Shown: piece by piece, positions 23,007 through 52,161 of the stretch
Position numbering within the stretch: position 1 is the first letter of the stretch
Layout: each line of letters begins with the position of its first letter
From: Gracilinanus agilis
Lineage: Eukaryota
Assembly (NCBI RefSeq): GCF_016433145.1
Contig: NC_058130.1
Coordinates: 797,441,400-797,505,399, forward strand
DNA: 64,000 nucleotides
Direction of reading: 5' to 3'
The notes under the pieces: model-generated
Seen by the model: the letters and a program-made list of their open reading frames with translations, nothing else
Told to the model about the DNA's origin: nothing
The model's database searches: none
Position numbers and translations under genes: made by a program

Positions 23007-31914
<8,908 letters not shown>

Positions 31915-32739
31915 GAATGTGACACGTGTGAAGGCTTTCTGCTAGAATACATTATTTATTGAACGCCAGAGGATTCATACCGAAGAAAACCTTATGAATC
32001 TGGAAAAGTAGGACTTAGTCAATAGCAGATGACTCTTAGAGGGATATAACTTTATGAATGTACTGATGTAGGGAATGCTTTTTTTTTAAAGCAAACATCA
32101 TGGAAGAAGTTTAAAATGTATTTAACATGAAAACCCTTTCATCAAGAATATGGAACTTACTGAACATCAAATCCATATTGGAGAGAAGTATTATGTGTAA
32201 AGATTTTAGCCAGAGGCACAATCTTTTACTAAAGTTAGGGAATTCAAACCCAAATTTTGTAGTGAAGTAAGTCCTTGCTTAATTTCCCAAAATAGTTCTT
32301 ACAAGCCTCTTCTCTCATTAACTGTCTTCCTCACACATAAAACACTTGGAATCCTAATTTACTATGAAATTTTTGGATATCTAATTGGATATAATGAAAC
32401 TGTTTCCTGAAAAATCCTGTGAATTGCCATCCATGCTTTTAATCCTTCCTGTCACTGAGGAAGAACCATCTCTAGACTTTGCTGAAATTTCTTCCTTCAG
32501 TACTTCTGCAGAATTCCTTTCCTTCTACTAACCTTCTCTTCAGCATCTACCTTCAGCAATCATCTAATCCTATTTCCCCCACCCACCCCTTCTACCAACC
32601 ATCAGGGCTTTTCTGTATTAGAAAACTACCTGAAACCTGCACCAGCCAACTACAACACATTCTGCTGACAAACAATAAAAAAAATCTGCCTCCTTGCAGC
32701 CTTCCTTGTTGTCCTCCTTTTTTCCTATGCTTTGAAGCT

Positions 32740-38331: not shown

Positions 38332-48976
<10,645 letters not shown>

Positions 48977-49396
48977 GTATTTGACACTATTAAGTTCCTT
49001 GTACTCCTGGGTATTCTTCTCCTTCCCTGTCTTTGGATCATACAATTAGAGGTTTTTCTCTTACCTCTTTTTAACTGTGTCTTCTCTGTCTTAACTCTGT
49101 TGTGAATTGGTTTTTTGCTCATACCCTTTAAACTAATTGCTCTCTTAGATTCTGTCCTCAACATGTTCTTCTTTTCTTTAAACTCTCTCTGTCAGGAATC
49201 TCAGCCCTGTTTGAGAACTAGCATATTAAAAAACATGGGAGGGAGCTAGGTGGCTCAGTGGATTGAGAGTCAGGCCTGGAGAGGGAAGGTCTTGGATTCA
49301 AATCTGGATTTAGCCACTTTCTAGCTATGTGACTAAGTCGCTTTGCTCCCATTTCCTAGCCTTATTGCTCTTCTGCCTTAGAACCAATAGTTAGTA

Positions 49397-51812
49397 CAGT
49401 GATACCTTGGTACATGAGGACCTTGAGTCATGAGCAATTTGAGATATGAGCTGTCAGGATCAGGATTTTTTGCTTTAAGTCACAAGTGGATATTTGAATC
49501 ACAAGCTTTTGCCACCCTCCACTAGATTGCCTGCCTAACATTTAGTTTCACAAGTTACACAAGGCTATTTCATTTAGTTAGTGTTTAGCTGACTGTGTGA
49601 GCATCTGTATTGAATTGCTTTTGCTTTCTTCTTTATTTTTGTCTTTGTTATCAGTTTTTTGGGCAACTTTCTTAACTTTTAACCATGGGTCCTAAGAAAA
49701 TGAGTGCCAAGAGCAGTGCTGAGAAGAAGAGAAGGATGATGTTCATGAAATTAAAGCAAGAAATCATCAAAAAATATGAGCAAGGTGTGCGTGTTTCTGA
49801 CTTGGCAAAAGAATACGATCGTAGTACATCGACGATATGTACGATTTTGAAGCAGAAGGAGTTGTTAAAGGTTATAACGCCAGCCAAGGGTATTAAGATT
49901 ATTTCAAAGCTCCGGACCTCTGTCCATGAAGAGATGGAGAGGCTATTGTTAGTCTGGTTGATGGAGAAGCAGCTCACAGGAGATACTGTGACCAAAAGCA
50001 CTATCTGTGAGAAGGCACGAGAGATTTACGGTGATTTGGGGGAGCAGACACCAGGAACATCAATGGATGAGGCATCAAAAGAGCCATTCAAAGCCAGTCG
50101 GGGATGGTTTGATAACTTCAAAAAAAGGTCAGGCATTCACTCTGTTGTCAGGCATAGTGAGGCGTCAAGTGCAGATGAGAAGTCAGCAAAGGCTTTCATT
50201 GAAACCTTTGCAAAATTGGTAGAAGATGAAGCATACACCCCCCAGCAAGTCTTTAATTGCGATGAGACAGGGCTATTCTGGAAAAAGATGCCGAGGAGGA
50301 CATACATAACTGCAGAGGAGAAGAGCATGCCAGGCCACAAACCTATGAAGGATAGGCTAACCCTTGCGCTTTGTGCAAATGCAAGTGGTGACTGTAAGAT
50401 CAAGCCACTACTCGTATACCACTCAGAAAACCCCAGAGCTTTTAAGTCTCATAAAATAATTAAAGAAAAACTGCAGGTTATGTGGAGGGCAAACCCCAAA
50501 GCATGGGTCACCAGGGAGTTATTTGTGCAGTGGGTAAACCTGGTCTTTGGTCCTGCCGTAAAGAAATATTTGTCGGAAAATAACCTACCCCTGAAAGCCC
50601 TCCTCGTCCTTGACAGTGCTCCTTCACACTCGCCAAACCTCACAGAGGACATCCTTTATGAGTTTAAGTTCATCAGGGTCCTCTACCTTCCACCCAACAC
50701 TACCCCTATCCTTCAGCCCATGGACCAGGTGATTTCAAATTTCAAAAAGCTCTTCGTGAAGCAGCTGTTTCGGCAATGCTTTGAGATTACAGACAGCACA
50801 GACCTCACCCTTCAAGAGTTCTGGAAGGAGCATTACAATATAGTGACTTGCCTCAAAATTATTGACATGGCCTGGCAGAGTATTACAAGGAGGACCTTGA
50901 ACTCTGCGTGGAGGAAGCTCTGGCCTGAGGTTGTGTCTGAGAGCGACTTTGAAGGAGTCGAACCTGCAGAACCAGTGGTTGAGGAGATTGTGTCCCTCGG
51001 AAAGTCCATGGGCCTGGAGGTCAGTGAAGAAGACATCGATGACCTCCTCAAGAAGCACATGGAGGAACTGACGACGGAGGAATTGAAGGAGTTACAGCAG
51101 CAGCAGCAGATGGAGGTTTTGCAGGAAATTAGTGGAGAGGAGCCCGAGGTGGATCAGGTAATCAGTACAAGCAGGATTAAGGAAATGTTGAGGTTTTGGG
51201 AAAAAATTAAACAGTTTATTGAAAAGACACACCCAGAAAAAGTTGCAGCAGGGCGTGCATTGGAGCTGTGTGATGATACTTGTTTCACACATTATCAAAA
51301 CATTCTGAAAGAGAGGAAGAAACACACTTCCATGGAAAGGTTTTTGTTGAAATAGAGAAAGGTGGGGTAAGACAGCCAAGATTCAGTGAAGAAAATGATG
51401 CTAATTAAGTCAAAAAATAGCAGTTAAGTTTAGCAATAAAATTACACATAACAAGTAATATGTAAGGCCAATTTTGCATTTAAGTATAGCGTTACATGTG
51501 TAGAGTAAGTTATGTTAAGTGGTAGCACACGAAATGAAAAACTTCTCCGCCAGCTTCTTTGCCTGACCTTAAAGGTAAATAACGTTTCATAAACAAGTTT
51601 GTTTCTTTACATCCTTTCTTATTAGCTATGTTATTTACAAAGTACACTTTTGTATGTAAAAGCATATAAAACAAAAAATTTGTGTGGTTTTTGGGGGGTT
51701 GGAATGGATTAATTGCATTTCCTTTCATTTAAATAGGGAAATTCAATTTGACACATGAGCAAATTGAGCTTGGCCATGGAATGAATTAAACTTGTGTGTC
51801 AAGGTAGTGCTG
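49397..51812 (+). mobile_element. Full-length Tigger (pogo-like, IS630-Tc1-mariner) DNA transposon, 2416 bp
   Basis: TA TSD (49395-96, 51813-14). Imperfect 22-bp TIRs CAGTGATACCTTGGTACATGAG vs CAGCACTACCTTGACACACAAG (15/22 identical). Confidence 0.92.
49685..51355 (+). CDS. Tigger/TIGD1-like transposase, 556 aa, uninterrupted
   Basis: N-terminal HTH-psq/CENP-B-type domains (DLAKEYDRSTSTICTILK; FKASRGWFDNFKKR) and a DDE_1 triad: NCDETGLFWK, VLDSAPSH, QPMDQ (36 residues between D2 and D3). Confidence 0.93.
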   Translation: MGPKKMSAKSSAEKKRRMMFMKLKQEIIKKYEQGVRVSDLAKEYDRSTSTICTILKQKELLKVITPAKGIKIISKLRTSVHEEMERLLLVWLMEKQLTGDTVTKSTICEKAREIYGDLGEQTPGTSMDEASKEPFKASRGWFDNFKKRSGIHSVVRHSEASSADEKSAKAFIETFAKLVEDEAYTPQQVFNCDETGLFWKKMPRRTYITAEEKSMPGHKPMKDRLTLALCANASGDCKIKPLLVYHSENPRAFKSHKIIKEKLQVMWRANPKAWVTRELFVQWVNLVFGPAVKKYLSENNLPLKALLVLDSAPSHSPNLTEDILYEFKFIRVLYLPPNTTPILQPMDQVISNFKKLFVKQLFRQCFEITDSTDLTLQEFWKEHYNIVTCLKIIDMAWQSITRRTLNSAWRKLWPEVVSESDFEGVEPAEPVVEEIVSLGKSMGLEVSEEDIDDLLKKHMEELTTEELKELQQQQQMEVLQEISGEEPEVDQVISTSRIKEMLRFWEKIKQFIEKTHPEKVAAGRALELCDDTCFTHYQNILKERKKHTSMERFLLK

Positions 51813-52161
51813 TATTGATTCTAAGATGGAAGATAAGGGTTTAAAAAAAAAAAAAAAAACAGGGAAGAAGAAAAAATGGAAGGCCCAGGATGACTCTGAA
51901 GGCAGTTGTACTGGGCCCCTTTTCCTTTTTTGAAATGATCTCAAGACTCTGAATGTTTCAAGTTTTCATCATTTTTATTTTGTTGGGGGTAGAAAAAAGG
52001 CTAAAAATGGGTGCTGGCTTTATTATGGCTGTGATGAGGCTTTTTTTGGTTATTGTTCCTCGATCATTTGAATTTGGGGGTATCAAAAATGGGCAAGGAC
52101 TAGATTTGAGGGAAAGGCAGAATTGGCAGGAGTCCAGATAGCACCAAACCTCCTGCCCCCC

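What the first reader, a model, noticed from the sequence alone, without database searches (positions are those of the whole stretch)
49397..51812. Intact DD36D Tigger transposase with decayed TIRs, nested inside a SINE: domestication or late DNA-transposon activity
Seen: a 556-codon ORF with no stop or frameshift and all three catalytic Asp present, while the two TIRs differ at 7/22 positions (two TG/CA pairs look like decayed CpGs). The element splits a SINE1_Mdo-type SINE at a duplicated TA, so it postdates that SINE. QPMDQVI looks one codon shorter than the QPMDQQVI/QPMDQGVI I recall from relatives, i.e. a possible in-frame indel. Inference: an open ORF in a visibly aged element suggests purifying selection (a TIGD-like domesticated gene), or a comparatively late, possibly horizontally acquired Tigger invasion of the opossum lineage.
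Basis: partly seen in the sequence, partly recalled or inferred. Interest (0 to 1): 0.75.

Follow-up and report, generated by a model that had tools for sequence, protein, structure and literature searches.

The report
Full-length opossum Tigger transposon, bat-related
This is a rare full-length copy of a cut-and-paste jumping gene (Tigger/pogo type) in an opossum genome; its closest known relative sits in a South American bat, so the family probably entered opossums by jumping between species, and nothing here shows that the host has tamed it as a gene.

Summary
A 2,416-bp Tigger/pogo element (49397-51812) has imperfect TIRs (15/22) and a TA duplication. It splits a marsupial SINE and carries an open 556-codon DD36D transposase ORF that lacks one Gln codon found in all relatives.

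The ORF is open but not pristine. It has private N311S next to D310 and the deleted Q348 next to D347. The roughly 20-residue C-terminal tail of its relatives survives only as a relic behind two stops.

Contigs of public runs show the element's ends 100-1000 times deeper than its coding core. Recurrent internal-deletion joints mark abundant MITE-like derivatives. Only about 2-4 core-bearing copies exist, and at least one other is frameshifted.

The closest protein outside opossums is in the Neotropical bat Saccopteryx leptura (85-88% identity). The clade is otherwise scattered over hagfish, lizards, fishes and arachnids, which points to horizontal acquisition. No other marsupial relative was found.

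A Monodelphis domestica model joins a 96%-identical zinc-finger array to a 93%-identical, C-truncated Tigger ORF, so that locus probably carries the same insertion.

Evidence for purifying selection on this copy is weak: P = 0.0006 raw, about 0.02-0.06 after stratification or against controls. dN/dS could not be measured.

Verdict: a lineage-specific, horizontally acquired Tigger, most likely a near-neutral copy. Domestication is not shown (about 0.2). The scan noted this stretch before (s1-185002).

The parts
49397..51812 (+). Complete Tigger/pogo DNA transposon, 2,416 bp
   Evidence: TIRs, TA TSD and transposase ORF. No second copy in the window.
49395..49396 (.). Left TA of the target-site duplication
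   Evidence: Direct reading. The SINE consensus has a single TA at this point.
51813..51814 (.). Right TA of the target-site duplication
49397..49418 (+). 5' terminal inverted repeat (starts CAGTGATACCTTG)
   Evidence: Its first 13 nt are identical to the TIR published for a related Anolis Tigger.
51791..51812 (-). 3' terminal inverted repeat, matching the 5' TIR at 15 of 22 positions
   Evidence: Mismatches lie at positions 4-6, 14-15 and 19-20.
49685..51355 (+). Transposase ORF, 556 codons plus stop (DD36D)
49724..50143 (+). N-terminal CENP-B-type DNA-binding region: two helix-turn-helix domains, residues 14-61 and 82-153
   Evidence: Pfam CENP-B_N, HTH_23 and HTH_Tnp_Tc5. PDB 1hlv CENP-B, E 6e-7.
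50348..50911 (+). DDE_1 catalytic domain, residues 222-409. Catalytic codons: D193 at 50261-50263 (just upstream of the Pfam envelope), D310 at 50612-50614, D347 at 50723-50725.
50615..50617 (+). Private N311S, next to catalytic D310. Private A314S follows at 50624-50626.
   Evidence: Every other copy laid here reads A at 50616; G at 50624 is read only by the organism-B copies, while the second organism-A copy shows no T>G there and has a C insertion at that place.
50723..50728 (+). Site of the private 3-bp (CAG, Gln) deletion right after catalytic D347
   Evidence: The alignment column is 97% conserved. CAG is 'put in behind 50725' in other copies.
51356..51409 (+). Relic of the ancestral C-terminal tail behind the stop, with a second in-frame stop
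   Evidence: The translation reads RKVG*DSQDSVKKMMLIK. The bat and hagfish tails read ..SESEESV(V/A)KK.K...
49691..51068 (.). Boundaries of the commonest internal deletion seen in non-autonomous (MITE-like) relatives. The segments outside these boundaries are high-copy.
   Evidence: Joint 49691>51068 in 25 contigs of X1 and in all four runs. The ends are 100-1000 times deeper than the core (tables 2 and 5).
49237..49396 (+). Left part of the host SINE that the element split
51815..51860 (+). Right part of the host SINE with its A-rich tail
47297..48976 (+). Zinc-finger exon of the neighbouring KRAB-ZNF gene. Its stop lies 421 bp upstream of the element, and an ATTAAA signal sits at 49225.
   Evidence: It is 96.0% identical to the ZNF part of M. 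domestica model P0121.

Best explanation
This is one of very few full-length, autonomous-type copies of a didelphid-specific Tigger (pogo superfamily, DD36D) DNA transposon family.

Shown:
- A cut-and-paste element with CAG... TIRs inserted at a TA inside an older SINE, just 3' of a KRAB-ZNF gene.
- It encodes a transposase with two CENP-B-type helix-turn-helix DNA-binding domains and a DDE_1 catalytic domain.
- The same family has spawned abundant internally deleted, non-autonomous derivatives that keep only the ends.

Inferred:
- The family entered the opossum lineage horizontally. Its sister is a copy in the Neotropical bat Saccopteryx leptura, and the wider clade is scattered over unrelated animals.
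- The family was active fairly late for a mammal.
- This copy has since drifted almost neutrally. Its frame is still open mainly because it is young (about 1-3% private divergence) and by luck.
- It already carries lesions beside two catalytic aspartates, so it is probably no longer a fully competent transposase and is not a host gene.
For: Identity as a Tigger/pogo transposon.

Insertion anatomy (TIRs, TA TSD, split SINE).

Family structure:
- The ends 49454-49756 and 51070-51877 are 100-1000 times deeper than the core 49757-51069.
- Recurrent deletion joints appear in all four runs: 49691>51068, 49693/49695>51076, 49508/49513>51137.
- Core depth is only about 2-4 times single copy.
- A second core copy in the same organism is about 12% diverged, with several frameshifting indels.
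- This exact copy is present in an independent-looking whole-genome contig set, X1, as pieces with 0 differences.

Horizontal origin:
- The best non-opossum hit is a S. leptura protein, 89% identical to the M. domestica copy and 85-87% to this one.
- The ML tree gives (bat,(window,M. domestica)) with 100/100 support. That trio sits in an unresolved cluster with hagfish+Anolis, Myotis+reedfish+turtle and arachnids+frog.
- Eutherian Tigger1/TIGD1-type proteins are only 56-58% identical and form another clade.
- No other marsupial is among 180 listed hits.
- Published Tigger and bat horizontal-transfer surveys do not include this family.

Near-neutral state:
- Private N311S, A314S and the Q348 deletion.
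- This lineage has as many amino-acid changes (23) as the decayed M. domestica (16) and bat (18) lineages.
- The neighbouring ZNF array is more conserved (96.0%) than the Tigger ORF (93%) between the two homologous loci.
- Under neutrality the chance of keeping the frame on this branch is 1-10%, which is not extreme for a copy picked because it is open.
- CpG o/e is 0.37, near the background of 0.32.
Against: - Amino-acid changes on this copy's branch fall less often on sites conserved among 59 relatives than neutral mutation predicts: 2 of 23 against 43%, P = 0.0006. The M. domestica and bat branches look neutral.
- If the M. domestica locus carries the same insertion, as model P0121 suggests, that skew arose after insertion and hints at selection.
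- No frameshift in 556 codons.
- Small, transcriptome-sized contig sets of the same organism (X2-X4) hold pieces identical to this copy, which suggests transcription.
- dN/dS could not be measured, because no DNA of relatives could be fetched.
- Age estimates rest on truncated tables and k-mer shares.
Confidence: 0.6

Rival explanations
1. Incipient or lineage-specific domestication. After insertion next to the KRAB-ZNF gene, the host of this genome kept the Tigger ORF under purifying selection. It would act as a stand-alone DNA-binding protein or as part of the KZNF transcription unit. Catalysis would be dispensable, which would account for the lesions near the catalytic Asp residues.
For: - Branch-specific changes avoid conserved sites: P = 0.0006 overall and 0.037 within the catalytic domain.
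- The 556-codon frame is open, with only an in-frame deletion.
- M. domestica annotations treat the homologous ORF as coding, in one case fused to the ZNF array.
- Contigs identical to this copy occur in transcriptome-sized runs.
- KRAB or ZNF plus pogo-transposase genes have precedents such as POGK (my own knowledge). Another domesticated Tigger beside a dead KZNF gene was noted in this genome (unchecked).
Against: - Stratified by domain, the skew is only P about 0.02-0.03. Against the two control lineages, Fisher P = 0.057. Adding N311S (0.897 conserved) and the Q348 deletion weakens it further.
- The number of changes is not reduced compared with the neutral-looking homologue.
- TIRs and TSD are intact.
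- The M. domestica homologue has lost its last 57 or more residues and changed H157, D164 and N352, all 97% conserved.
- No orthologue in other marsupials.
- In this window, an in-frame TAA at 49673-49675 and the absence of an AG acceptor after 49653 rule out a canonical in-frame splice from the ZNF exon.
- A more degenerate paralogue is represented at higher depth in the same small runs, so transcription does not imply function.
Confidence: 0.22
2. A still transposition-competent autonomous element. The copy inserted recently from an active lineage, its private changes arose under transposon-level selection before insertion, and it may still mobilise the MITE-like relatives.
For: - Open ORF with all three catalytic Asp residues.
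- A selected-type pattern of changes.
- Abundant derivatives whose ends share exact 31-mers with this copy in a second organism.
- The 5' TIR is identical over 13 nt to that of a related Anolis element.
Against: - It requires this copy and the M. domestica copy to be independent insertions. Yet both lie behind 96%-identical ZNF arrays.
- The Gln deletion falls in a motif conserved in 97% of relatives, and N311S sits beside D310.
- The 3' TIR differs at positions 4-6.
- None of the private states is shared by any other copy laid, so no progeny are visible.
Confidence: 0.1
3. Vertically inherited ancient mammalian Tigger (Tigger1/TIGD1 type), with the bat similarity due to shared ancestry.
For: Tigger elements are widespread in mammals.
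Against: - Only 56-58% identity to eutherian Tigger1/TIGD1-type proteins, which form a separate clade.
- 85-88% identity to one bat genus, with no intermediate mammals and no other marsupials.
- The element is far younger than the SINE it split, whose copies differ by 22-28%.
Confidence: 0.02

Closest known systems
Tigger family of the pogo superfamily (DD29-36D), as surveyed in PMC7386202 and PMC9219625
   Same: - CENP-B-type double HTH plus a DDE_1 domain with a D..D..36..D triad.
- CAG-initiated TIRs of about 22 bp and a TA TSD.
- Length of about 2.4 kb.
- MITE-like derivatives and repeated horizontal transfer.
   Different: - This opossum/bat lineage is not among the metatherian Tiggers of that survey (Gymnobelideus, Trichosurus, Phascolarctos). 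Those have CAGAC/CAGCC termini and 541-546 aa.
- This copy lacks one Gln after the third Asp, and its ORF stops about 20 residues early.
Tigger copy in Saccopteryx leptura (protein P0242, annotated as a ZMYM6 isoform)
   Same: 85-87% amino-acid identity over residues 5-556. It is the sister branch with 100/100 support.
   Different: - The host is a eutherian bat.
- It keeps the C-terminal tail and QPMDQQ.
- It is embedded in a host gene model.
- Its DNA, TIRs and copy number could not be examined here.
M. domestica A0A5F8G8Y5 (P0001) and the 1170-aa KRAB-ZNF-Tigger model P0121
   Same: 93% identical ORF behind a 96% identical zinc-finger array, so this is probably the same insertion at a homologous locus.
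   Different: - The ORF ends at residue 501.
- It has changes at three 97%-conserved sites.
- It keeps N311, A314 and QQ.
- Its KRAB exons are only 67-71% identical to those in the window, so orthology versus paralogy is unresolved.
Horizontally transferred DNA transposons shared by opossum and bats (SPIN, OposCharlie/OC1 hAT elements; PMC10162687, PMC3621081)
   Same: The same pair of host groups, the same kind of patchy distribution, and autonomous copies accompanied by many non-autonomous ones.
   Different: - Those are hAT elements, whereas this is a Tigger/pogo element.
- It was not reported among the bat-centred horizontal-transfer families. In that study only OposCharlie2 linked M. domestica to bats.
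Domesticated pogo/Tigger genes (TIGD1-7, JRK, CENPB, POGK, POGZ)
   Same: An intact-looking pogo transposase ORF with CENP-B-type DNA-binding domains, lying next to a KRAB-ZNF gene.
   Different: - Domesticated genes have lost their TIRs and TSD, are single-copy and are conserved at orthologous sites across orders.
- Here the transposon hallmarks persist, the family is multicopy, and conservation beyond one related opossum is not seen.

Membership tests
pogo superfamily / Tigger family transposon | DDE_1 catalytic domain with a D-D-D triad, 29-36 residues between the 2nd and 3rd Asp | tested here: met
   Pfam DDE_1 E 2.7e-38. D193, D310 and D347, spacing 36.
pogo superfamily / Tigger family transposon | N-terminal CENP-B-type paired helix-turn-helix DNA-binding domains | tested here: met
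   CENP-B_N, HTH_23 and HTH_Tnp_Tc5. 1hlv CENP-B DNA-binding domain, E 6e-7.
pogo superfamily / Tigger family transposon | Terminal inverted repeats and a TA target-site duplication | tested here: met
   15/22 TIRs starting CAG. TA on both sides, with a single TA in uninterrupted SINE copies.
pogo superfamily / Tigger family transposon | Groups with Tigger transposases in a phylogeny or sequence search | tested here: met
   987 hits, the named ones among the 120 listed mostly called tigger transposable element-derived protein 1(-like). ML tree.
Eutherian Tigger1 / TIGD1 lineage | Close identity to, and a shared clade with, Tigger1-type proteins | tested here: not met
   56-58% identity. Separate clade with 100/100 support.
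Domesticated transposase gene (TIGD-like) | Loss of transposon termini (TIRs and TSD) | tested here: not met
   TIRs and TA TSD are still recognisable.
Domesticated transposase gene (TIGD-like) | Intact orthologues at the same locus across species | tested here: inconclusive
   One homologous locus in M. domestica has a C-truncated ORF. No other marsupial protein was found.
Domesticated transposase gene (TIGD-like) | Purifying selection after insertion (dN/dS well below 1) | tested here: inconclusive
   - The proxy test on conserved sites gives P = 0.0006 raw, about 0.02-0.03 stratified, and 0.057 against controls.
- A partial list of nucleotide differences gives about 9 nonsynonymous to 3-7 synonymous, against a neutral ratio of 2.6:1.
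Domesticated transposase gene (TIGD-like) | Expression as a host mRNA or protein | tested here: inconclusive
   Identical contigs occur in three small runs of unknown library type. A degenerate paralogue is covered more deeply.
Horizontally transferred transposon | Similarity between distant hosts far above what vertical descent allows, with a patchy distribution | tested here: met
   - Marsupial versus bat, 85-88% amino-acid identity.
- The tree is incongruent with host phylogeny.
- Absent from other marsupials in the protein searches.
Horizontally transferred transposon | Absence from orthologous sites in sister lineages, plus a DNA-level dS comparison with host genes | not testable with these tools
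   No access to eukaryotic genome DNA other than the window.

The most novel reading that the evidence does not exclude
In this opossum lineage, a horizontally acquired Tigger that landed behind a KRAB-zinc-finger gene is being kept by selection as a new DNA-binding protein, while its counterpart in Monodelphis domestica decays. That would be a transposase domestication caught at an early stage, with termini still attached.
Probability: 0.2. Interest if true: 0.7.

Novelty: new member of a known kind. Interest (0 to 1): 0.42.

Why it matters
Recent DNA-transposon activity is rare in mammals outside bats, and horizontal transfer is the usual way such families arrive.

A Tigger lineage shared by a didelphid opossum and a Neotropical emballonurid bat adds a pogo-superfamily case to the opossum-bat exchanges known so far for hAT elements. 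It also identifies the probable autonomous partner of an abundant opossum MITE-like family.

Because the ORF is open and a homologous locus exists in a second opossum, the locus is also a convenient test case for telling a young, lucky transposase ORF from early domestication.

Tried and rejected
No DNA of the M. domestica, bat or other relatives could be fetched, so no codon-level dN/dS, no family consensus and no TIR comparison with close relatives.
- **Metagenome scan** returned only distant relatives (63% identity or less, apparently insect-associated samples). They were not useful for TIRs or synonymous sites.
- **Protein search with the neighbouring ZNF exon** was swamped by zinc-finger words. 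Nothing above 64% identity appeared in the allowed length range, so it settled neither the species nor orthology.
- **blastn of the element against the window** found no further copy.
- **Earlier findings by sequence** gave nothing.
I re-ran it reading the protein from the session files.
- **CpG decay as the cause of the TIR mismatches**: considered and set aside. It is hard to square with 31 surviving CpGs in the ORF.
- **Canonical in-frame ZNF-Tigger splice in this window**: excluded by an in-frame TAA and the lack of an acceptor.
- **Naming the coded organisms A and B** of the run search: not possible. Circumstantially, B (nine studies) fits M. domestica and A (one 2021 study) fits another didelphid. 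This was not proven, so age and orthology arguments are kept conditional.
- **The large representative protein search, structure prediction and fold search** were not used. The family assignment was never in doubt.
Full report
**What is there**

The ORF list gives a single long frame, 49685..51355 on the + strand, 556 codons.
- Pfam places a DDE_1 endonuclease domain at residues 222-409 (E 2.7e-38), an HTH_Tnp_Tc5 domain at 82-153 and a CENP-B_N/HTH_23 domain at 14-61.
- The only solved structure matched by sequence is the CENP-B DNA-binding domain 1hlv.
- The catalytic aspartates are D193, D310 and D347, with 36 residues between the last two.
- The element runs from 49397 to 51812. Its 22-nt termini match at 15 positions, and both are flanked by TA.

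Joining 49237-49396 to 51815-51860 rebuilds a SINE that aligns without a break to six other SINE copies in the window. In public contig sets, other SINE copies continue past 49396 with the very sequence that follows 51814 (loose ends). So the Tigger inserted at a TA inside an older SINE, whose copies differ from one another by 22-28%.

That includes the missing codon: the other rows of the 11-protein alignment read QPMDQQVIS (one reads QPMGQQVIS), while this copy reads QPMD-QVIS. Other genomic copies carry a CAG behind 50725.

**What 'intact' hides**

Relatives extend about 20 residues beyond this ORF's stop. Here the next codons read RKVG*DSQDSVKKMMLIK. That is a recognisable relic of the ..SESEESV.KK.K.. 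tail of the bat and hagfish proteins, now holding two stops.

The copy also has private N311S directly after catalytic D310, A314S, and the deleted Gln directly after D347. The Gln column is 97% conserved.

**The family**

Contigs of four public runs were laid on 49050-52050 at 85% likeness or better.
- One whole-genome-sized set (X1, coded organism A) holds pieces identical to the window over 50201-51102 and 51464-51686. The copy is therefore real in that organism.
- The element's ends (49454-49756 and 51070-51877) are 100-1000 times deeper than its coding core (49757-51069). The core is only about 2-4 times single-copy depth.
- Recurrent joints appear in all runs, for example 49691>51068 in 25 contigs of X1, and 49693/49695>51076.
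- This is the signature of an abundant internally deleted, non-autonomous (MITE-like) family, about 1 kb long, served by very few coding copies.
- The second core copy in organism A is about 12% diverged, with several frameshifts.
- A second coded organism, B (nine studies), has the same high-copy ends and two core copies. It has no contig identical to this one. Its closest is 4.2-4.5% diverged over 50398-50821 and carries the CAG.

From the share of 31-mers held by organism B (0.15-0.19), and from the positions where nearly all family members read another letter, this copy's private divergence in the shared ends is roughly 1-3%. Both sources are incomplete, so this is only an order of magnitude.

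**Relatives and origin**

The word-index protein search found one M. domestica protein (P0001, 93% identical, 501 aa). The next hits were hagfish (79%), reedfish (75%), Myotis (74%), Anolis (72-73%), and a crab, a scorpion and spiders (69-71%). Eutherian Tigger1/TIGD1-type proteins were at only 56-58%. No other marsupial was among the hits.

P0001 shares its 90% cluster with a 1170-aa model, P0121. Searching with the Tigger part of that longer protein revealed a copy in the Neotropical bat Saccopteryx leptura, annotated as a ZMYM6 isoform. It is 89% identical to the M. domestica copy and 85-87% identical to this one over residues 5-556.

An ML tree gives (bat,(window,M. domestica)) with 100/100 support. 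That trio lies inside an unresolved cluster mixing hagfish+Anolis, Myotis+reedfish+turtle and arachnids+frog. The eutherian Tigger1 type and an Antechinus fusion fall in a separate clade.

Such similarity between a marsupial and a bat, with nothing in between, cannot be vertical. The family was acquired horizontally, in one or both hosts.

The literature I could read does not list this family:
- The 2022 Tigger survey lists only three Australian marsupials, with different termini and protein lengths.
- The bat horizontal-transfer survey links M. domestica to bats only through the hAT element OposCharlie2.
- Repbase and Dfam could not be consulted.

**The homologous locus**

P0121 consists of KRAB, a zinc-finger array and then the Tigger ORF from Gly2.
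- Its ZNF part matches the window's ZNF exon (47297-48952) at 96.0%, with 22 differences in 552 residues.
- Its Tigger part matches at 93%.
- Its KRAB exons match those in the window at only 67-83%.

Two independent full-length insertions behind near-identical ZNF arrays are very unlikely. I therefore take the two Tigger ORFs to descend from one insertion (about 85%), as orthologues or as products of a segmental duplication.

In this window the two ORFs cannot be joined by canonical splicing. An in-frame TAA lies at 49673-49675, and the only AG upstream of the ATG is at 49653. An ATTAAA at 49225 could end the ZNF transcript before the SINE.

**Is it under selection?**

I therefore polarised amino-acid changes with the bat copy and 59 further relatives.
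- This copy's branch has 23 changes, the M. domestica branch 16 and the bat branch 18.
- Only 2 of the 23 fall on sites that are at least 90% conserved. A codon-aware neutral model predicts 43% (P = 0.0006). The other two branches look neutral.

The signal shrinks on inspection:
- Much of it comes from an excess of changes in the poorly conserved C-terminal third.
- Within domains the P values are 0.11, 0.04 and 0.10.
- Against the two control branches, Fisher's P is 0.057.
- N311S (89.7% conserved) and the Gln deletion count against it.
- The number of changes is not reduced compared with the decayed homologue.
- The Tigger ORF has diverged more than the neighbouring ZNF array.
- A partial list of nucleotide differences gives about 9 nonsynonymous to 3-7 synonymous changes derived in this copy, against a neutral 2.6:1. 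That is compatible with ratios from about 0.5 to 1.

Under neutrality the chance that this branch kept the frame is 1-10%. That is unremarkable for a copy chosen because it is open. CpG o/e (0.37) is close to background.

Contigs identical to this copy occur in three small, transcriptome-sized runs of organism A. Their library type is not on record, and a degenerate paralogue is covered more deeply there.

**TIRs**

The 5' terminus shares its first 13 nt with the published TIR of a related Anolis element. The 3' terminus differs at positions 4-6, 14-15 and 19-20.

Whether this is decay or a native asymmetry could not be decided. Published tables show unequal left and right termini in many 'intact' Tiggers.

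**Conclusion**

Identity as a full-length Tigger/pogo transposon is certain. Horizontal origin of the family is well supported at the protein level.

The most likely state of this copy (0.6) is a young, nearly neutral, probably catalytically impaired autonomous copy. Early domestication (about 0.2) and residual activity (about 0.1) remain open, and both are directly testable.

Noticed in passing
window 43540-48976 (+): A KRAB-ZNF gene lies immediately upstream of the element. KRAB-like exons sit at 43540-43686 and 43811-43900, a linker exon at 45816-45953, and a ZNF exon at 47297-48976. Identity to M. domestica model P0121 rises from 5' to 3' (71%, 67%, 83%, 96%). That pattern suggests paralogy with a younger shared 3' part, or a chimeric model.
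   Followed up: partly
window 26773-26910 and 30577-32082 (+): A second KRAB-ZNF gene, with a ZNF array 50-60% identical to the first. The window lies in a KZNF cluster.
   Followed up: no
proteins P0121, P0242, P0243/P0004, P0010/P0015, P0256/P0257, P0248/P0249: Annotated models repeatedly join Tigger transposase ORFs of this and neighbouring clades to host domains: KRAB-ZNF (M. domestica), ZMYM6 (Saccopteryx), a GTF2I-like domain (Myotis), SCAN (Anolis), ATF7IP2 (Antechinus) and C2H2 fingers (lamprey). I did not assess whether these are real fusions or prediction artefacts.
   Followed up: no
window 49757-51069, contigs of runs X1/X2: The same organism has a second core-bearing copy, 5-13% diverged, with G217A at an invariant site and several frameshifts. 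In the small run X2 it is covered two to three times more deeply than the open copy.
   Followed up: partly
window 51353-51370: The stop that ends the ORF may be a family-wide feature rather than private. No majority difference was listed there among thousands of derivative copies, and the tail behind it is far more diverged from the bat tail than the 57 residues in front of it. I could not verify this, because the difference table was truncated.
   Followed up: partly
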